Positions 3,705-29,695 of a stretch of 64,000 bases of DNA are shown in pieces (position 1 is the stretch's first letter; the number at the start of each line of letters is the position of its first letter). The position numbers and the translations under genes are program-made. This stretch comes from Salpingoeca rosetta (Eukaryota; Protista; Choanoflagellata). The DNA lies in the NCBI GenBank assembly GCA_033442325.1, contig JAWQFM010000023.1, forward strand, positions 297,558 through 361,557, read 5' to 3'. Under the pieces are notes generated by a model. The model saw only the letters and a list, made by a program, of their open reading frames with translations. It had not been told where the DNA came from and did no database searches.

Positions 3705-13462
<9,758 letters not shown>

Positions 13463-14184: not shown

Positions 14185-19641
<5,457 letters not shown>

Positions 19642-20555: not shown

Positions 20556-20830
<275 letters not shown>

Positions 20831-20924
20831 CACCAATGTCCCGGTTCAGCCATGCACAGGGGTACACGTGCGGTCACCTCACCTGCACTGCACTGCTCTT
20901 CGGCCACGCTTGCCGTTTCAGCCT

Positions 20925-21749
20925 CTAACGGGCAACAACGCACATGTAGATATCATCACTATCGTAACTGCGGTACATGCGCTTCACGGCACCTTCACGG
21001 CACTTGCAAGCGCCGTTGGAGTTGTACATGGCACCATACAGGTTTTCGCAGTTCGAGCCGGCGTCCTCACCAAAGCCCACAATCTCAAAGTTGTAGTTGG
21101 CGCGGCCGACCTGCAGCTGTTGCACTGCAGGGGCGACACCGGCGGGCTTGGCAACAACCGTGCACACAAAGCCTTTGTTGGCGGCGCGGAAGTAGTAGGT
21201 CTTTGCCTCGCGAAGGCGGATGGTGAACTCGCCCCCAATCTTGGCGTTGCCGCTGCTGAACCCGCCCTGCACTGCTGTTGAACCGTCGCTCATGGTCTCG
21301 TACACGGCCTCCAGCGAGCTCCACTTGAAGGTCATGTAGTCGCCAACGAGGGCAGAGACTGTGACTGGGTTCCAGCCGTCCGCAGCCTCCGTCACCTTGT
21401 GCTCCTTGGACGAGCTGAAGAAGACACCATTTGGTGCGGAGATGTACACGGCGTCGTCGTACACCTCAAACACGTCCGTGATGCGGCCCCTGCGCGAGTC
21501 CTGCGCGCCATCAGTGAGGCCAACAACGGCCTTGAGCTCCTTCACGTCCTCCACCAGCTGTTTGAAGCTGACGCCATTCACAAACACATCCTGCTCCGGG
21601 GATGTCGTGTTGATGTGCAGGTGGCCCGAGGAGTCCGAGGCGAAATAAGGGTAGGGCACGTCATTCGCGGCGACAGCCAGCAGTAGACTCTTGTTGGCAG
21701 CAGCGAGGCACGCCACAGCGAGCAGCATGAAGCGAGATACCAAGAGCAT
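20925..21749 (-). CDS. Intronless 274-aa secreted protein: signal peptide, cubilin-N-terminus-like beta motif plus coiled coil, cupredoxin-like domain, small Cys-containing C-terminal domain
   Basis: Clean ORF with coding-type GC3 bias. Signal peptide MLLVSRFMLLAVACLAAA. Motifs: PYFASDSSGHLHINTT-x4-DVFVNGVSFKQLVEDVKELKAVV; VGDYMTFKW...GGFSSG...GEFTIRLREAKTYYF; CENLYG...GACKCREG...YMC. Confidence 0.75.
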   Translation of the reverse strand: MLLVSRFMLLAVACLAAANKSLLLAVAANDVPYPYFASDSSGHLHINTTSPEQDVFVNGVSFKQLVEDVKELKAVVGLTDGAQDSRRGRITDVFEVYDDAVYISAPNGVFFSSSKEHKVTEAADGWNPVTVSALVGDYMTFKWSSLEAVYETMSDGSTAVQGGFSSGNAKIGGEFTIRLREAKTYYFRAANKGFVCTVVAKPAGVAPAVQQLQVGRANYNFEIVGFGEDAGSNCENLYGAMYNSNGACKCREGAVKRMYRSYDSDDIYMCVVAR

Positions 21750-21983
21750 GGCTGGTTGGCTTGGTGGAGAAGCAGTTGTCGTTGGATCAGAGGAGGAGGG
21801 AAGGGAGAGGCTAGGGGGCGGGTGTGTTTGCTTTGTGGCAACAAAGAAAGAGAGAACAAACAAAGAGGAGGCTGAACACTTCAACACACAACGCGCAACG
21901 GGAATTGTGCATAATTTGCACGAAAACTTTCACAAATTGTCCCAGTCAACTTTTCGTTCTTGTCCAACTGCAAGACCAACATC

Positions 21984-24625
21984 ATGCGCGGTGGTTGCTG
22001 TGTTGTGAGAGGGCTGTTGTTGGCGGTGCTTGTCGCCGCAGCGGCACAGGGCGTCGCATCAGCATCGTCGTCGTCTTTGGCTGCATGGATCGGACCAGGG
22101 ACGAAGTGGGTTGCAGTGAGCAATTGGCAAGACGGAACAACTCCGTGCGAAGATGATACCGTCGTTATCCAGGTATGTGGCTGTGTTCTGTTCTGTTCTG
22201 AGTCTGTTGTAGCAGTAGCTGTTCGTTTTGGGAGTTGAGGGGTTGTGTTGTTCTTGTTTCAGTCGTTCTGTGTTGTTTCGTGTATAGTTGGTTGTGCGTG
22301 CTGTGTGTTTTGTTGTGTTGAAGAGGATGGCATTCTCCGTTGTTTGCTAGCCCAGCCATGTTCCCCGATTGCTCCTCCCAACCATCATTCTATCACTCTG
22401 CAAATTCGCTTCCTTCCTGTCATGTCGTCGTCTCAAGTGCTGTTGACTTTTTGGTGCTCATACTCATCGCCCCACTCAACACTCACCCCACTTGTTGTTG
22501 TGTCCTTTTGTTTCCACCGTCTCTTCACCAAATCCCTTTCGTTCCTTGCAGGCCAGTGCTGGAGACACGGCCGTCGTGCAGCTGCCGCCGTCGCAAGTTC
22601 GCGTCGTGCACGCACTTGGACTCGGCCCATCAACCATGCTCCAAGTGCTGCCAAACTCCGTGCTTGCCTTTGAACCACCGGACAATGAGAAGGGCACGGA
22701 AGAGACGAGGGAGCGCGACGCGTACCCGTGCGCCCCGCTTGCCGATCTTCGGGTGAGTCGCTAAGGAAGTAAGGACGGCTGCCGTGAGGTTATTGGGAGC
22801 TCTGCTCATCATGCCCAACAATACTGCTCTGAAGGGCACTTGCACATCTTCTCACACCAGGTTTGCTCTGTATTGCCACCGACGGCGCGTGATGGCCGCG
22901 CACGTGTGATTTTGTGCATGAGCAGGTGGAGCCCGTGACAGGGAGCACACTCCTTGTGACCTGGTCAAGGGCAGCAGCGGGAGTGGACCGGGTCATTGTC
23001 AGGTGCGCACATGCAGGCGAATGAACGACGATGTGCACGAGGTTGACTTGGTGTTTGGAATGGTCTGGGGTTGGGTGCACTGATGACCTCGAGCAGCGCC
23101 TGTGCTGCTGATCGCCAAGCGCGGGACCCTCGATCTTGGTCAACTCCCCCCCCCCAATGCGTATGTCCCCGATAAGGTACATACATGCCTTGTCTCTCAC
23201 ACTGCTCAAACACGCGCATGGTTTGTTTGCGTGCCTGTGTAGCCTGGAGAGGGAAGAGGCGTCGGCCGGCCCACAGATCCCCGCCCTGTCCACGACGCAA
23301 GATGACGTTGCTGCCGGCCAAATGGCGGTTCATCGCCTGACTTCAGGCGCAGCGTACGCTGTGTCTGTATCCGTACAGTACAAAGAAAATGCAACCAGCC
23401 ATGTCCCGGTTCTCACCACCTCCGTCAAGATGCCGCCCACAGGTGCCATGTGATCGTGTGAGAACTGTGCGTGCGTGTGTGCGTGTGTGTGTGTGCGCGT
23501 GTGTGCATGTGTGCGTGTGTGCGTGTGTGCGTGTGTGCGTGTGTGCGTGTGTGTGTGTGCGTGTGTGTGCGTGCGTTTGTGCATACGTGTGTGTTTTACA
23601 TGGTGTTGTGTTGTGGTTCGTTGTGCTGGGCTGTGCCCGAGGCGGTGTAGCGTGTGTGTCTGTGATGACATGACATTGTCCTGTTTGGAATGCCCACTGC
23701 AAGCGTGATGGTGCAGAAGAAGCGTGCGTCCTATTCACCACTCGACCACTCATGCGGGGTTTTGTTCTTATTCCTTGTGTGGCACCACGGCACGCCAGTG
23801 TTCTGGATTGGGGATGGCGATGACACTGCGGTGTGGAGCGCGGTCTCATATTGGCTGTACGGGTCTGACACGAGCGGCCAAGGCACGCCACTCCGCCGTC
23901 CTGCATGCGACGACCACGTTGCTGCTGCCAATGTACGGCACTGCTTGCTGGCATGCCAGTACCACGGTGATGGTGGCGATTTAGTGTGGGGGAAAAGGAG
24001 AGGGAAAGAACTTGGACGTGTGTTTCGTGGCATGTTCGTAGCAAGCGGTAGTCATGATGCATCTGGTATGCACGTGTGGTGTATGTGTGTTTGCATTGAT
24101 TGTTTGTGTGTGTATGTATGCATACATGTGTGTGTGTGTGCCCTCAGCGTCTTGTGTATCCTACATGTGTGCTTGTACACTTGTGCTTGCGTGCACTCTC
24201 TGTCTCTGCTTCTCCCTCAACTCTGCGCTGCTTTCTGATTGAATTCACCGATAGGACATCATCGTTGAAGGCAACCAGCGTGCGGACAGGTATCAGGCAA
24301 CTGGCTGCTGTCGAGTGTCACATCATGTCACCTTCTGAAAGCTAGAGTGCGTGTGATCTGTGGTGTTACATCTGTTTGCCACACGTTGATAGCCGAGTCT
24401 ACATCTTCACCAATTATCCTCTCTCACACACACACACAAACACACACACACACTCACACACACACACAATGCCAGTGTGTCGCTGAAGCCGAACACACAT
24501 CTCTTCATTGCGCCCTCCTCAGCACTCTACTTTCCCTTCCAGGTGCGGTGGTGTCAGCGTCCCTTCACCAAGTGATCGTGGTTCCACGCAGTGTGTGCTC
24601 TTCTTAAATCCCTCAACCTGCTATT

Positions 24626-24688
<63 letters not shown>

Positions 24689-25172
24689 CACACTTACTCA
24701 CTGTGAGCTTCGGCTTGTGTGCGTTTGCTTGGCGGTGGTGGCAGGGCGGTGAAGGGGAAGATGGTTTGGAGCCGTGCGAGCAGCCAACAACAACAACAGC
24801 AGCCACCACCACCACCACGTTCACCACCACCACCACCATCGCAACAACTACAGAGGCGGCAACGACGCTTCCAAGCACCACCACCACCACTAACAACAAC
24901 GACGACGACGACGACGACATTCCTGATGTTGACGATGATTTGGCCGCCACAACCACAACCACAACCACAACGCTGGAACCCGGCGTTGATGTTGTTGTGC
25001 AGGCTGTTCTGCACATTTCGCAACCACCAGCTCATGTTAACACGAGGTGTGTGCGCGTGCGTGTGTGGTGTGTGTTTGCTATTGAAGCGAGCACCAACAC
25101 TCATTGTTTGATGTCTCCCATCCGACCCCTCGCTTTCTCTCTCACTCCCTCTCACATACACACACATACACG

Positions 25173-25210
<38 letters not shown>

Positions 25211-28200
25211 GCGCGTGACCTGTGCTCGCAGGCAATTGACTGCTGCCATCGCCATTGCGCTAGACGGGCGCTTGGATACACACATCTTCTCTCGTGGCGC
25301 TGTTGAAATCACAGCCGTTCTTGCAGCGGCAGCAGGGTACGATGTTGCATCATGCACATATCGTGCGCGTGTGCGTGTGTATATGTGAGCGCGTTTGTTG
25401 ACGATGATGGCGGTGGGGTGGATGCAGATCGTAACTTTGAGAGGTGTAATGCTCTTGCTAGCTCTTGATGTCGCTTTGCTGACTCTCTCATGATTGGTTT
25501 CACCGCAACTTGTTGTGCCACACTCCCACAGCAACAGCACGGTCCTTGTTGAGCTGCGTGTGCCACCGGAACTCAAGTCCGACACCATCTGCACTCTTCC
25601 TGTGCGTGTCAAGTTTGCTTGTGTGCGTGCGTGTGTGCTTTTGTTTGTCGATGACCATGCATGCATGTGTGGGAGTGTGGGAGTGTGGGTGTGTGGGTGT
25701 GGGAGTGTGAGCTTGTGTGAGCTTGTGTGTGTGTGTGCATATGTGCGTGTTTTCAGCCTATTTAGGTGAGACTTGCACGGACTGACCACAATCGCTTGCT
25801 CCACGCTCTATGTGGCACTCTTGCAATCAATGACTCCCCTCCCTTCTCACCCATGTGCCACATTCTGCAGACATTGTTTGCGCCGTTCAGTGCAGTGGAG
25901 GCCGTGGTATCCATCTACACGAGCAATCCCCACATCTCTGTATCTCTTGTCTCCCTCACTCGCTGTCCAGCGTGCAACTGTCCCGCCGGCAAGGTGTGTG
26001 CGTGCTTGTGTGTGCGGCTTGTGTGTGCGGCTTGTGTGTGCGGCTTGTGTGTGTGTGTGTTGTGCGCATGCGTATGTGTGTGTGTTCTTGTGTTGTGCGC
26101 ATGCGTATGTGCACCTGTGTGCGCCTCTGTGTGTGTGTACGTGGATGTGTAATGTGTGTATTTGTGCCTGTGTGTATGTGTGCGTATGCGTGTGCTGCTG
26201 ATGAATTTGCGGCCATTTGTACTGTCGCCATTCTGTCCTGTGGGCCTCTGCTGTTCTGTGACCCCTTCCGCCTCCCGCTCCTTTCGCTGTCTCTTTCCTT
26301 CTCTCTTCTCATGGGAACCGCCCACTATGATTCACTGTGACTCACTACGCACCTTTCATTCCTCCAACGCACTGCACCACCACCATCACCATCACCACCA
26401 CCACCACCACCACCACCATGCGTGTTGTTGTAGGCCACATGTCCCGCTGGCTCTGTACTGCACATCATCACGGGGGAGTGTCTGAGCCGCCCAACATGTG
26501 TTGACGGCTCCACCTGCACGTGTCCCTCCAACGGCGCACCAGAACTTGTGAGCAAGCGCGTGCTGCGTGCTGCATATTCTGCTCTGCATCTGTATGTGTG
26601 TTCCTGTGTTTGTATGTGTGTTCCTGTGTCTGTATGTGTGTGTTCGTGAGTTTGTGTGCATGTGCACGTGCCATGGTTTCCAACGCATCAGGATTCGCGC
26701 TTCTGTGCGCGCGATGGGATTCTGAACACGCTTTCATCTCCATCGCACTTTGTCACACTTGTATTCACACACTCACCTAACATAAGTGCTCATGTGATTG
26801 CCCCACATGTTTACACGCATTCAAACCTTCACGCTCACGCATGGTGTGTGTGTGTGTGTGTTGCAGGTTGATGGTTCGTGGGTGTGCCGCGTGGAGACAG
26901 TGTGCTCGTCAGAGAATGCGCGCTACGTGCCAGAGTTGGGCATGTGCGTCGTCGATGGCAACCCATCCCAAGCCAGTGGGAGCACCGGCAGTGCAGATGT
27001 ACGCACGTGCATGCGTGCATATTTGCATGTATGCATGGTGGTGCACGTTTCTTGTGTGTGTGTGTGTGGCCGAGCTTTGCATGCTCGCTCCCCTGTTGGA
27101 GTGTTGGCGTTGAATGTATGTTCGCGGCCGAAAACAGTCATGTCACACGTTTTCCCATTCATTCGGAGAAGAAGTGTATGAGTTTCGCATCTCCTCACTG
27201 TCCGTGTCACACACACCACGGTCTCCACCGCTACTGTTTCATGACAGCCATCCATCGCGATTGGCGCCAGCGTCGGCGCACTCGCCCTTGTAATCATCGC
27301 TGTATTTGTCGTCTGGCTGCGTCGCACCGCAAAGCCACGCACAGCCGTGCAGGTACGAATTTGAGCATTGCAACGCGCCCGCACGTGGCGAACACAGTGA
27401 TGTGAGCACACTCACAGTGGCACAGTGATCACATGCACACGCTTGTTCATTCAAGTTGGGGGTGGTGCGCCATCGTGTGACGTTGGTGCGTGCTTGGGGC
27501 GTGTTGATGTGTACGTTGTGCTTGTGTTTGTGTTTGTATTTGTACGTGTACGCGTATGTGTCGCGTGTTGAGTGTCTTGGTTCTACCTTATGCTATTGGT
27601 ATGCGTTGCAGTGGCTAAGCTTTTGATTGCACACACTCATATGACAGCTTGGCGACACGTGGAGCAACAAGAATGCCTCGTCTCCGCCATTGTCCTTTTC
27701 ACCATCGGGTGCGCAGTGCAGTCACATTGCAGAGCAGCAACGCACTGTTCTGTGGCCTGCTTGTTCCGATGAGGCTTTCCTGTGTTTGCGCACAGTCGCA
27801 CGCGCCCGCCCCTCTCACAGCCACACGCACACATGCACGCACAAACACATTCCCCGTTCACTCACGCTGTCGCCATACATCCACACACTTTTTTCGCTCG
27901 CTCGCACGCACACTCACATACACCCATCATACGTGACTGTTTAGGTTCGACGTACCACGCCAATCCAATGTGGCAGCCGCCCCCTGGTCATGTGGGCGAC
28001 ACGACAGCAAGCGAGGCCGACTATGCAGATATGAACGGCTTCACCGGCGCTGACGACTACCTGTCACCCGTCTCGGGTGCCTCGTCCTCCACCGCCACCA
28101 ATGGCAATGCGTTGTCTGAACGCGCGCAGAGGAGTCCTGCCCACGCTCAAGAAGCTGTAGCGTCCAGTGGAGTTTACGCCACGCCAGCCTGGCAAGCAGC

Positions 28201-28834
28201 CAAGCAGCAACAGCACAACGGGGAGGCAAGACAATTCCAAGCACCGCCATCATCATCATCATCACTGCCTTCGTCACAAGCGGGCACGACACAGTGGCAG
28301 CGTGCAAACGTGTATGGGTTGCGTGGGGTGTCATCAGCAACGCCGCTGCCACCACTGCCGCGTCAGCACCAGGGCAGCAGGGTGGCTGAAGAGCCCACGG
28401 CCGACTATGGGTTTGAGTATGACGACATGCCTTGCCAAACAACTGCAGTGCCACCGCAGGCACATGCTCCTGGCAATCAACAGCGGCCGCAGCCGCATTT
28501 GTACAATGTTGCGCACTCCAACACGCTCCACCCGTCGCGTGGTAGCAGCAATGCCGTGTATGACAACTGTTTGCCTGCTGTCACTGCTCGTGGTGGTAGC
28601 AGCGGTGACGGCGGCGATGCCGAAGCCACATATGACACGATTGAGGCACCAGCACCACCTCCCATCGTTCCCCGCGCAAACACCAAGCGCAGCCAGCAGC
28701 GGCAGCAGCAGGGATCAGTTCCTGCACGCCATTACGAGAATCCAGCGTACTCGCGGCGCCAGGACGGCGTCACGCTGAGGGCCCGCCCCCACACCTTGTT
28801 CGCTGACGGGGATGATGATGAGCAGCAGGCATGA
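21984..28834 (+). CDS. Amnionless-like type I membrane receptor (16 exons): signal peptide, AMN-type beta-helix 1, FN3, AMN-type beta-helix 2, Thr-rich stalk, SEA-like domain, Cys-rich region, TM, Tyr-rich tail with NPxY
   Basis: Phase-consistent GT-AG exons at 21984-22172, 22552-22752, 22926-23002, 23243-23442, 23799-23932, 24255-24289, 24476-24542, 24745-25046, 25232-25336 and 25532-25601, then approximately 25871-25993, 26434-26547, 26867-26998, 27248-27352, 27648-27707 and 27945-28834. [28 protein letters not shown] resembles the amnionless N-terminus (W..N..F..A.NW....PC....V.F). TM is [23 protein letters not shown], and the tail carries YENPAY. Confidence 0.7.
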
Positions 28835-28860
28835 TGGCGGTGGCGCTGCAGGTGCCGCGT

Positions 28861-28962
28861 GTGTTGTTGTTGCTGTTTAAGTTGTTGTTGTTTAAGTTGT
28901 TGTTGTTGTTGTTTAAGTTGTTGTTGTTGTTGTTGTTGTTGGTGGTGGTGGTGTTGAAGCCC

Positions 28963-29021
<59 letters not shown>

Positions 29022-29052
29022 GGTGGTGGTGGTGATGGTGGTGTTGAAGCCC

Positions 29053-29093
<41 letters not shown>

Positions 29094-29117
29094 GGTGGTG
29101 GTGATGGTGGTGGTGGG
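28861..29117. repeat. Compound (GTT)n/(GGT)n repeat with a duplicated GGTGTTGAAGCCCTT unit and TTTAA interruptions
   Basis: Read directly from the sequence, just 3' of the AMN-like stop codon. Confidence 0.85.
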
Positions 29118-29695
29118 GTGTTTCATCGTGCGTGGCTGGCTTCTTGCTTGTGTCGTATGCATGCATGTGTGCATGCCTGTGTTGTTGTTTTCTGTTTGCG
29201 ATGCGCTGTCTGCTGGCCATCGTTTACTCCAGATGCCCACAACAAGACACAAGCCGCACCAAGTTGCACAAGCAAAAAGTGCAACAGCAATGCAACCCAA
29301 GCACACACACACACACACACACACAAACGAAGTGAATCAATCAATCATACAACCACCGCGCAGCTTGCATCCACTCTCTCCTCTTCACTTTCCCCTGGAG
29401 AACGTCCTTTATGCGCTTCCGTTCTGTCAATGGCAAATTGTCGAGGAGGAAGAAGAAGGATAAAGCAGATCAGCGTTTGTGTGTGAGTGTACGTGAAAAA
29501 CGTGGGCCGTCAAAGCGAGCGGGTGCTGGACAGCAAAGCAGCTCGACGCAGGGCAAAGGAAGTGCCGCAGATCAACACGGCGACCATTCGACAGACGTCG
29601 CATTGAAGCAGGACAAGATACCATGACACAGATGCACGCACACACACACACACACACACCCACACACACACACACACGCACGCACACACACACAA

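What the first reader, a model, noticed from the sequence alone, without database searches (positions are those of the whole stretch)
20925..28834. Head-to-head pair resembling a unicellular, modular CUBAM (cubilin-amnionless) receptor
Seen: two genes start 234 bp apart on opposite strands (ATG 21749 minus, ATG 21984 plus). One is a membrane protein with two copies of a W-x6/9-W-x5-W...P(A)C.D.V...beta-rich...PC unit, a SEA-like domain ([11 protein letters not shown]), a Cys-rich region, a TM and a cytoplasmic YENPAY. The other is a small secreted protein beginning PYFASDSSGHLHINT...DVFVNGVSFKQLVEDVKELK. Known: animal amnionless has two beta-helices, a Cys-rich segment, a SEA domain, a TM and FxNPxF endocytic motifs. 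It docks a cubilin trimer through cubilin's N-terminal intertwined beta-helix (PRMATERGNLVFLTG...IKLNDEDL) followed by a coiled coil. Inference: this is an anchor plus trimeric ligand-binding subunit sharing a bidirectional promoter. The cubilin docking module here carries a different cargo (cupredoxin-like plus small Cys domain) in place of EGF/CUB arrays. That would be a pre-animal plug-in receptor system, possibly for prey, ligand or nutrient capture. I am not aware of a description of it.
Basis: partly seen in the sequence, partly recalled or inferred. Interest (0 to 1): 0.88.

Follow-up and report, generated by a model that had tools for sequence, protein, structure and literature searches.

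The report
Choanoflagellate CUBAM-like receptor gene pair
In the choanoflagellate Salpingoeca rosetta, two genes that start 234 bp apart encode a membrane protein resembling animal amnionless and a small secreted protein, and a structure model docks three copies of the small protein onto the large one in the way cubilin docks onto amnionless, which suggests this receptor design predates animals.

Summary
ATG 21749 (-) and ATG 21984 (+) lie 234 bp apart. The minus gene is one exon (274 aa, P0001). The plus gene has 16 GT-AG exons that reproduce the annotated 934-aa protein XP_004989259.1 (P0006).

- **For:** ESMFold2 docks three copies of P0001 residues 28-100 onto P0006 residues 28-320 with ipSAE 0.79/0.79/0.81, against 0.01 for the best of 3 controls. 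The mark was reached by 51 of 78 solved complexes and 2 of 108 mismatched pairs. The N-terminal strand of each copy (aa 31-40) pairs antiparallel with one of three consecutive strands (84-86, 91-94, 100-103) of repeat unit 1. This is the published AMN-cubilin geometry.
- **For:** Pfam Amnionless is the only hit to exon 1, but below threshold (15.9 against 30.4 bits).
- **For:** The head-to-head layout recurs in one uncultured marine relative.
- **Against:** No sequence search reached AMN or cubilin in the PDB, and no P0006 orthologue beyond one exon was found. AlphaFold2 could not fold the units. FN3 and mucin inserts and a reversed SEA/Cys-rich order differ from AMN. The complex may be recalled from the solved CUBAM structure.
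- **New:** The docking module heads at least 150 genes in this genome, while the anchor is single-copy.

The parts
20925..21749 (-). Small gene: single exon, 274 aa plus stop (P0001); a secreted protein
21666..21749 (-). Signal peptide of P0001 (about aa 1-28; the cleavage site is inferred, not predicted by a tool)
   Evidence: sequence; alignment with orthologues
21567..21659 (-). Docking strand (aa 31-40) plus the two-turn beta-cap motif GHLHINT...DVFVNGV (aa 42-61). D39, G42, T48, N58 and G59 are invariant in 25 family members, and position 36 is always hydrophobic
21480..21566 (-). Short helical, coiled-coil-like stalk (about aa 62-90)
   Evidence: AF2 helices 62-75 and 85-90; orthologues and paralogues have longer heptad stalks
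21135..21422 (-). Cupredoxin-fold cargo domain (aa 110-205) without copper ligands
   Evidence: pLDDT 77-87; Foldseek against PDB 5fc9 E 7.7e-5, TM 0.71 by target; Atlas neighbours
20928..21119 (-). C-terminal beta-rich domain with 4 Cys (aa 211-274), shared with paralogue L003
21750..21983 (.). Intergenic region of 234 bp between the two divergent ATGs; a presumed shared promoter, not tested
   Evidence: no clear conservation with the 312-bp spacer of the relative
21984..28834 (+). Large gene. Its 16 exons are 21984-22172, 22552-22752, 22926-23002, 23243-23442, 23799-23932, 24255-24289, 24476-24542, 24745-25046, 25232-25336, 25532-25601, 25871-25993, 26434-26547, 26867-26998, 27248-27352, 27648-27708 and 27945-28834. 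The product is P0006, 934 aa
   Evidence: (translation identical to P0006)
22080..22737 (+). Repeat unit 1 (aa 33-125; spans intron 1), a candidate for AMN-like beta-helix 1 with Cys55 and Cys123
   Evidence: Pfam Amnionless aa 38-79 to profile positions 6-44, E 0.006; repeat E 9e-5
22609..22680 (+). Predicted docking face, aa 83-106. Three strands (84-86, 91-94, 100-103) each pair with one copy of the small protein. Hydrophobic residues recur every 8 positions (L85/L93/L101 and L87/V95/F103)
   Evidence: sequence; compare the AMN base residues M69, L71, L77, L79, F85 in PMC6283879
22741..23442 (+). FN3 domain (aa 127-222; spans introns 2 and 3)
   Evidence: Pfam fn3 E 3e-4, 21.3 bits against a 25-bit cut-off; AF2 pLDDT 70-80 in this part only; Atlas neighbours
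23799..24786 (+). Repeat unit 2 (aa 223-315; spans introns 5-7), with Cys259 and Cys312
24787..25017 (+). Thr-rich, acidic mucin-like linker (aa 316-392)
   Evidence: sequence
25018..25963 (+). SEA-like alpha/beta region (aa 393-491; spans introns 8-10) with a G-N-S-T-V-L-V motif; the fold is not confirmed
   Evidence: TM 0.44-0.51 to ALE2_N and Nup54 clusters; no Pfam SEA hit
25964..26947 (+). Cys-rich, EGF-like region (aa 492-566, 11 Cys; spans introns 11 and 12)
   Evidence: weak EGF/TNFR-type Pfam hits
27248..27316 (+). Transmembrane helix (aa 584-606)
   Evidence: sequence
27953..27973 (+). YHANPMW (aa 642-648), a non-canonical NPx-aromatic motif in the tail
28733..28750 (+). YENPAY (aa 902-907), a canonical [FY]xNPx[FY] endocytic or PTB-binding motif
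   Evidence: PID/PTB domains match at 19 places in the genome

Best explanation
The pair encodes a membrane anchor and its trimeric soluble subunit, assembled like animal CUBAM. The steps below are marked as shown, predicted or inferred.

1. The small protein P0001 is secreted into the ER. This is inferred from its signal peptide.
2. Three chains join through a two-turn beta-cap (G-x-L-H-I-N-T ... V-F-V-N-G) and a short coiled coil. This is inferred from the motif, the heptads and the predicted symmetric complex.
3. The three N-terminal strands (aa 31-40, hydrophobic centre around Y35/F36/A37) form a triangular face. That face stacks on the open last turn of repeat unit 1 of P0006 (aa 83-106) through antiparallel strand pairing. 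This is predicted.
4. The cupredoxin-fold and Cys-domain heads are thereby tethered to a type-I membrane protein. A YxNPxY motif in its tail could recruit PTB adaptors for endocytosis. This is inferred.
5. P0006 is most likely a very divergent relative of amnionless, and the module a relative of the cubilin N-terminus. The evidence for common descent is weaker than the evidence for a common mechanism.
For: - **Predicted complex:** ESMFold2, run without alignments, folded P0006 residues 28-320 with three copies of P0001 residues 28-100. ipSAE was 0.79, 0.79 and 0.81, against 0.01 for the best of 3 controls. The mark was reached by 51 of 78 solved complexes and 2 of 108 mismatched pairs, counts that hold only roughly for this multi-copy job. 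Partner pLDDT was at least 70, and the runs share at least 83% of their contacts.
- **Symmetry:** all three copies use the same residues (fragment positions 4-13, 15, 17, which are P0001 31-40, 42, 44). Each copy touches a different strand of P0006 (84-86, 91-94, 100-103). The residue indices run in opposite directions, so the pairing is antiparallel.
[quoted passage not shown] P0006 has the same 8-residue hydrophobic period (L85/L93/L101 and L87/V95/F103).
- **Pfam:** Amnionless is the only family hit by exon 1 (E 0.006), and it aligns in register with the start of the profile (positions 5-29 and 6-44 of 442).
- **Repeat:** the two units are related (E 9e-5), each with a Cys pair 53-68 residues apart.
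- **Membrane-proximal parts:** an SEA-like region, a Cys-rich region, a TM segment and YENPAY are present.
- **Synteny:** the head-to-head layout is conserved in one relative.
- **Expression:** runs that look like transcriptomes hold all of the small gene and about the exon fraction (0.42-0.48 against an expected 0.45) of the whole stretch.
- **Module conservation:** the docking-strand position that matches Met44 is hydrophobic in 24 of 24 family members.
Against: - The only direct evidence for binding is a structure model. A like complex (CUBAM) was solved in 2018, so the pass may show likeness recalled from memory rather than binding.
- The calibration of the complex test held pairs of single chains, not 3+1 chains.
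- The Pfam hit is below threshold (15.9 against 30.4 bits), covers only about 40 residues, and is absent for the relative's exon 1.
- Neither P0006 nor the exon-1 profile hits AMN, and the 25-sequence module profile does not hit the cubilin chain, among PDB sequences at E up to 10.
- AF2 without an alignment left both units below pLDDT 50, so the beta-helix fold is not independently modelled.
- No orthologue of P0006 beyond one exon was found.
- In a second relative (the P0004 species) the 2.1 kb upstream holds a different gene.
- The W..NW..PC..D.V.I opening also resembles the starts of other right-handed beta-helix domains. This last point rests on my own knowledge and was not tested.
Confidence: 0.55

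Rival explanations
1. The two genes are unrelated neighbours. P0006 is a mucin-type adhesion or sensing protein (beta-helix-like units, FN3, mucin stalk, SEA-like, EGF-like, TM). P0001 is one more member of a huge secreted family. The predicted docking is an artefact of a model that likes to stack open beta-edges or that recalls 6GJE.
For: - The membrane-proximal half (mucin linker, SEA-like, Cys-rich, TM) looks as much like a transmembrane mucin as like AMN.
- All sequence tests for AMN or cubilin are sub-threshold or negative.
- The module family has 150 or more members, and only this one lies next to P0006.
- Seven of 44 blind-drawn neighbour pairs also pass the complex test.
- The layout is not kept in the P0004 species.
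Against: - The score of 0.79 is far above the 0.34-0.59 range of the mismatches that passed, and all three controls are at or below 0.01.
- The interface is three-fold symmetric and lands on three consecutive strands that share an 8-residue hydrophobic period. This is a specific and physically sensible geometry.
- The head-to-head layout is kept in a relative whose exon-1 product is only 37% identical.
Confidence: 0.28
2. The two proteins do bind, but as a soluble trimeric ligand and its receptor for signalling or adhesion, possibly between cells. They would not be a co-assembled anchor-subunit complex, and the resemblance to CUBAM would be convergent.
For: - Phage tailspike and type VI secretion spike assemblies use a similar beta-helix end-to-end contact, which the CUBAM authors themselves called an unexpected homology (PMC6283879). 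Whether such contacts share descent or arose more than once is not settled.
- The long 328-aa tail with several Tyr motifs (YADM, YDDM, YDTI, YENPAY) would suit a signalling receptor in an organism rich in PTB domains.
- Sequence similarity to AMN and cubilin is not significant.
Against: - The open hydrophobic face of an uncapped trimer argues for assembly in the ER, as proposed for AMN and cubilin.
- The cap motif aligns in register with the Pfam Amnionless profile.
- The two-unit, Cys-pair and SEA-like/Cys-rich/TM/NPxY set is a long list to arise by convergence.
Confidence: 0.17

Closest known systems
[quoted passage not shown]
   Same: - Type-I membrane protein with two related N-terminal units of about 95 residues that open with W..NW..PC.
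- A trimer whose N-terminal strands are predicted to dock on the last turn of unit 1 by antiparallel pairing around a hydrophobic centre.
- An SEA-like and a Cys-rich region next to the membrane, a single TM segment, and an [FY]xNPx[FY] motif.
- A partner that starts with a docking strand, then a G-x-L-x-h-x-T ... F-x-x-G beta-cap, then a coiled coil.
   Different: - Not an animal.
- Below the Pfam threshold.
- An FN3 domain sits between the units, and a mucin-like linker follows unit 2.
- The SEA-like part precedes the Cys-rich part.
- The tail is 328 aa with one canonical motif.
- The partner's cap has two turns rather than three and a short stalk.
- The cargo is a copper-less cupredoxin fold plus a Cys domain, in place of 8 EGF and 27 CUB domains.
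- The module is reused in 150 or more genes.
Type VI secretion spike (VgrG trimer capped by a PAAR protein) and phage T4 gp5 with its tip protein
   Same: [quoted passage not shown] The CUBAM authors themselves draw this comparison.
   Different: Bacterial and phage puncturing devices. There is no membrane anchor, no coiled-coil stalk and no sequence match (PHROGs scan of the module: no consistent family).
Transmembrane mucins (mucin domain, SEA, EGF-like, TM; for example the MUC3/12/13/17 type). This comparison rests on my own knowledge.
   Same: A Thr-rich linker, an SEA-like region with a G-(N)-S-T-V-L-V motif reminiscent of the G/SVVV cleavage site, EGF-like Cys-rich repeats, a TM segment and a cytoplasmic tail.
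   Different: The N-terminal half (two beta-helix-like units and an FN3 domain) is not found in those mucins. There is no Pfam SEA or EGF hit above threshold.

Membership tests
Amnionless (PF14828) | Sequence scores above the Pfam gathering threshold (30.4 bits) | tested here: not met
   15.9 bits, E 0.006, aa 38-79 to profile positions 6-44. It is the only family hit for exon 1. The relative's exon 1 has no hit. A whole-genome scan gives only a spurious low-complexity hit elsewhere.
Amnionless (PF14828) | Two N-terminal right-handed three-faced beta-helix domains | tested here: inconclusive
   Two related units are present (E 9e-5) with cap motifs and Cys pairs. AF2 without an alignment gives pLDDT below 50. 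ESMFold2 gives partner pLDDT of at least 70 in the complex, but no coordinates were returned.
Amnionless (PF14828) | [quoted passage not shown] | tested here: met
   By prediction only. ipSAE 0.79 against 0.01 for the best of 3 controls; the mark was reached by 51 of 78 solved complexes and 2 of 108 mismatched pairs. Interface: aa 83-106 with aa 31-40 of each copy. The geometry is as in PMC6283879.
Amnionless (PF14828) | A Cys-rich region followed by an SEA domain directly before the TM helix | tested here: not met
   Both kinds of region seem present, but in the reverse order: SEA-like aa 393-491, then Cys-rich aa 492-566. The SEA fold is only suggestive, and there is no Pfam SEA hit.
Amnionless (PF14828) | A single TM segment and cytoplasmic FxNPxF-type endocytic motifs | tested here: met
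   TM aa 584-606; YENPAY aa 902-907; a second, non-canonical YHANPMW at aa 642-648.
Cubilin | An N-terminal intertwined beta-helix plus coiled coil that trimerises | tested here: inconclusive
   The motif and spacing resemble cubilin (a docking strand directly before G-x-L-x-h-x-T). AF2 places strands at 35-38, 44-47 and 54-57, then a helix at 62-75, at low confidence. The three copies are placed symmetrically. A 25-sequence profile does not hit the cubilin chain among PDB sequences.
Cubilin | Arrays of EGF-like and CUB domains that bind ligands | tested here: not met
   No EGF or CUB hit. The cargo is a cupredoxin fold plus a small Cys domain.
Cupredoxin (blue copper proteins) | A Greek-key beta-sandwich with His, Cys, His and Met copper ligands | tested here: not met
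   The fold is met (Foldseek E 7.7e-5, TM 0.71 by target). The ligand positions are not: the stretch that should carry C..H..M reads F-R-A-A-N-K-G, and the one nearby Cys (196) is not conserved.

The most novel reading that the evidence does not exclude
The single-copy amnionless-like protein is a universal membrane dock, and perhaps an ER escort, for the whole family of 150 or more secreted trimers that share the same N-terminal docking strand and beta-cap but carry different heads (mostly beta-propellers, also cupredoxin-like and other domains). This would give a unicellular relative of animals a combinatorial plug-in set of surface receptors, of which animal CUBAM is the one surviving descendant.
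Probability: 0.18. Interest if true: 0.93.

Novelty: new variant of a known kind. Interest (0 to 1): 0.8.

Why it matters
CUBAM is the receptor for vitamin B12 uptake in the intestine and for protein reabsorption in the kidney. Its unusual beta-helix-on-beta-helix anchoring has so far been described only as conserved from insects to man (PMC6283879).

A working counterpart in a choanoflagellate would move the origin of this architecture to before animals. It would show that the docking module can be separated from the EGF/CUB arrays. It would also give a function to a very large, uncharacterised secreted family, 150 or more places in a 55-Mb genome.

S. rosetta can be genetically manipulated. 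If so, the prediction can be tested directly.

Tried and rejected
- **Read laying:** No read depth, splice joints or transcript ends were obtained. They lie inside some loci that tools fetched by themselves (L001, L002, L012, L013, L076-L080), and I did not search with those loci.
- **My own splice variants A and B for exons 5-7:** dropped in favour of the annotated exon 24476-24542, which completes unit 2 and gives an exact match to P0006.
- **The search for homologous proteins with P0006:** only the protein itself came back, and all three searches are used.
- **The search of protein representatives with exon 1:** returned P0006 itself plus P0007, a 1960-aa protein with Rhs/YD-like repeats whose W..NW..PP.C repeats match by chance.
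- **Two scans of JGI metagenome contigs:** no relatives found.
- **PF14828 over the whole genome:** one hit, which is low-complexity sequence in an unrelated locus.
- **AF2 of P0006 residues 28-320 without an alignment:** only the FN3 domain folds, so no fold search against the AMN structure was possible.
- **PDB sequence searches with P0006, unit 1, the exon-1 profile and the module profile:** only chance hits.
- **PHROGs scan of the module:** nothing consistent.
- **Intergenic alignment with the relative:** no clear shared promoter element.
- **Searches for a second anchor in the genome:** none found.

Full report
**What is there**

The window is from Salpingoeca rosetta (GCA_000188695.1, scaffold GL832984.1). 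The minus-strand ORF 20925-21749 is a single exon of 274 aa (P0001).

The plus-strand gene begins at ATG 21984, 234 bp from the other ATG, and ends at 28834. I built its exons by hand from the sequence. I then recovered the annotated product (P0006, 934 aa, XP_004989259.1, auto-named 'histidine-rich metal-binding polypeptide') with a library search seeded by exon 1. A 16-exon GT-AG model reproduces it exactly. My first guesses for exons 5-7 were wrong and were replaced by exon 24476-24542.

**Anatomy of the large protein**

| Residues | Feature |
|---|---|
| 1-27 | Signal peptide |
| 33-125 | Unit 1: W-x6-W-x5-W ... [10 protein letters not shown]; Cys55 and Cys123 |
| 127-222 | FN3 domain (Pfam E 3e-4, 21.3 bits, below the 25-bit cut-off; the only part that AF2 folds with confidence) |
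| 223-315 | Unit 2: the same pattern; Cys259 and Cys312; BLASTP against unit 1 E 9e-5 |
| 316-392 | Thr-rich, acidic mucin-like linker |
| 492-566 | Eleven Cys |
| 584-606 | TM segment |
| 607-934 | Tail of 328 aa with YHANPMW (642-648), YENPAY (902-907) and three YxxPhi motifs |

It omits the FN3 domain and the mucin linker, and it hides the fact that the SEA-like part precedes the Cys-rich part, the reverse of AMN.

**Anatomy of the small protein**

- A signal peptide comes first.
- A short strand (aa 31-40) follows, then G-H-L-H-I-N-T-T-S-P-E-Q-D-V-F-V-N-G-V, then a short helix (62-75).
- Residues 110-205 form a confident beta-sandwich (pLDDT 77-87). It matches cupredoxins in the PDB (5fc9 E 7.7e-5, TM 0.71 by target).
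- The copper ligands are absent.
- The protein ends in a beta-rich domain with four Cys.

Four homologues (35-62% identical) come from Tara Oceans and other marine metagenome contigs.

**Sequence tests for amnionless and cubilin**

- Pfam Amnionless is the only family that exon 1 hits (E 0.0059, 15.9 bits). It aligns aa 37-61 to profile positions 5-29, and in the longer query aa 38-79 to positions 6-44, so the match is in register with the start of AMN.
- That score is half the curated cut-off of 30.4 bits. The hit does not recur for the relative's exon 1.
- phmmer and profile searches of PDB sequences with P0006, with unit 1, with an exon-1 profile and with a 25-sequence profile of the small protein's module found only chance matches. 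They found neither AMN nor the cubilin chain.
- By sequence, homology is therefore suggestive at best.
- From memory, and checked only where the paper names residues (N27, N35, N39, T41, L59, M69, L71, L77, L79, F85 of AMN; M44 of cubilin), the human cap [20 protein letters not shown] lines up well with [21 protein letters not shown]. This is a lead, not a test.

**Structure tests**

AlphaFold2 on P0006 residues 28-320 without an alignment failed for both units (pLDDT below 50). No orthologues could be found to build an alignment. A fold comparison with the AMN crystal structure was therefore not possible.

The one complex job was decisive in the other direction:
- ESMFold2, without alignments, folded P0006 residues 28-320 with three copies of P0001 residues 28-100.
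- ipSAE was 0.79, 0.79 and 0.81. The best of 3 controls scored 0.01.
- The mark was reached by 51 of 78 solved complexes and 2 of 108 mismatched pairs. These counts hold only roughly here, because the calibration used pairs of single chains.
- Partner pLDDT was at least 70, and the runs agree in at least 83% of their contacts.
- The interface is P0006 residues 59, 61, 63, 73, 79, 81 and 83-106. It is the same residues of each copy of the small protein: fragment positions 4-13, 15 and 17, which are P0001 31-40, 42 and 44.
- Copy 2 pairs with 84-86, copy 1 with 91-94 and copy 3 with 100-103. The indices run in opposite directions, so the pairing is antiparallel.

The CUBAM paper describes exactly this. 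[quoted passage not shown] P0006 shows the same 8-residue hydrophobic period (L85/L93/L101 and L87/V95/F103).

The caveat printed by the tool applies. Because a like complex has been solved, the pass may come from memory. It then shows likeness to CUBAM rather than binding by this particular copy.

**Context**

In the relative whose small protein is 62% identical (P0002), four contigs carry the orthologue of exon 1 of the large gene on the opposite strand, 312 bp away. It has a signal peptide, then ...S-W-V-D-S-S-T-W-S-S-Q-G-A-P-C-D-N-T-S-V-V-I-Q, followed by a GT donor. It is 37% identical to the S. rosetta exon 1.

In the P0004 species the 2.1 kb upstream holds another gene. The contigs of P0003 and P0005 are too short to tell.

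Indirectly, runs whose contig totals look like transcriptomes hold 1.00 of the small gene and 0.42-0.48 of the stretch 20900-28900. That share equals the exon fraction of 0.45, so both genes appear to be transcribed and spliced in the same runs. Co-regulation was not tested.

**A large family**

The N-terminal module is not private to this gene. A single-protein search found 51 places in the genome. A profile found at least 151, from 188 candidates of which 150 were scored. Many lie on one contig.

Typical members are single-exon ORFs of 400-600 aa. They have a signal peptide, then E-V-V-[LF]-x-E-D-D-x-G-A-[LF]-H-I-N-T-S-D-P-x-x-Q-P-V-F-V-N-G-V-D-V, then a Gln-rich coiled coil, then propeller-type repeats (Pfam DUF5074 and DUF6923). 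Others carry different heads.

D39, G42, T48, N58 and G59 are invariant, and position 36 is always hydrophobic. So the docking strand is a feature of the whole family.

The anchor is single-copy. Unit 1, and a profile of units 1 and 2, find only this gene. Two earlier first-reader notes on other pieces of this genome describe the same 'beta-cap, coiled coil, propeller' family. I confirmed the family by my own searches.

**Verdict**

The mechanism, a trimer docked on a membrane anchor as in CUBAM, is supported by a strong and geometrically specific prediction, by a sub-threshold but in-register Pfam match, by the shared list of parts and by conserved synteny in one relative. I put it at about 0.55.

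Membership in the Amnionless family is not established. The threshold and the domain order fail, and the fold is untested. The small protein is not a cubilin, since it has no EGF or CUB domains.

No paper in the searched library links amnionless or cubilin with choanoflagellates. I rate this a new variant of a known kind, of high interest, and directly testable.

Noticed in passing
S. rosetta genome, at least 151 places (e.g. L006, L007, L008, L010, L062-L065); none other inside this window: A very large family of single-exon secreted proteins. Each has a signal peptide, a conserved docking strand and beta-cap (..EDDxGALHINTSDPxxQPVFVNGVDV), a Gln-rich coiled coil, and propeller repeats (Pfam DUF5074/DUF6923) that end in ..IDPGC. 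Many members cluster on contig C4.
   Followed up: partly
L003 (G000:C4:568882-572034), L011, L072, L074, L069: Module variants. L003 is a 181-aa protein with two tandem modules plus the same Cys domain as P0001. A 'GRLIINTTDP' subtype carries a roughly 200-aa Trp/Cys-rich head with no Pfam hit. One member has a Ser/Thr-rich mucin-like tail.
   Followed up: partly
L017:50-1800 (+), Tara Oceans metagenome contig: In an uncultured relative, the gene upstream of the P0004 homologue carries three tandem copies of the module, followed by leucine-rich-repeat-like sequence.
   Followed up: no
window 21135-21422 (-): The cupredoxin-fold domain of the small protein lacks all copper ligands, so it is probably a binding module and not a redox module.
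   Followed up: partly
window 23463-23583, 24620-24690, 25150-25210, 26000-26200 and other introns; 20560-20800; 28840-29220: The introns of the large gene are packed with (TG)n/(CA)n microsatellites. One of them (23463-23583) tripped the reads filter. A (GA)n tract lies 3' of the small gene, and CAG/CAA-type low-complexity sequence lies 3' of the large gene.
   Followed up: no
window about 14185-19641 (-), about 10925-13462 (+), from about 30121 (+): Neighbouring annotated genes: an NPHP3-like NACHT/TPR protein (1234 aa), an ankyrin-repeat protein (1421 aa, running out of the fetched locus), and the start of a 2470-aa protein (from the gene table of L001).
   Followed up: no
G000:C26:818669-818797 (-), L081: A 3987-aa open frame gives a weak match (E 0.24) to the unit profile. 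It may be another beta-helix-type surface protein. I did not look at it.
   Followed up: no
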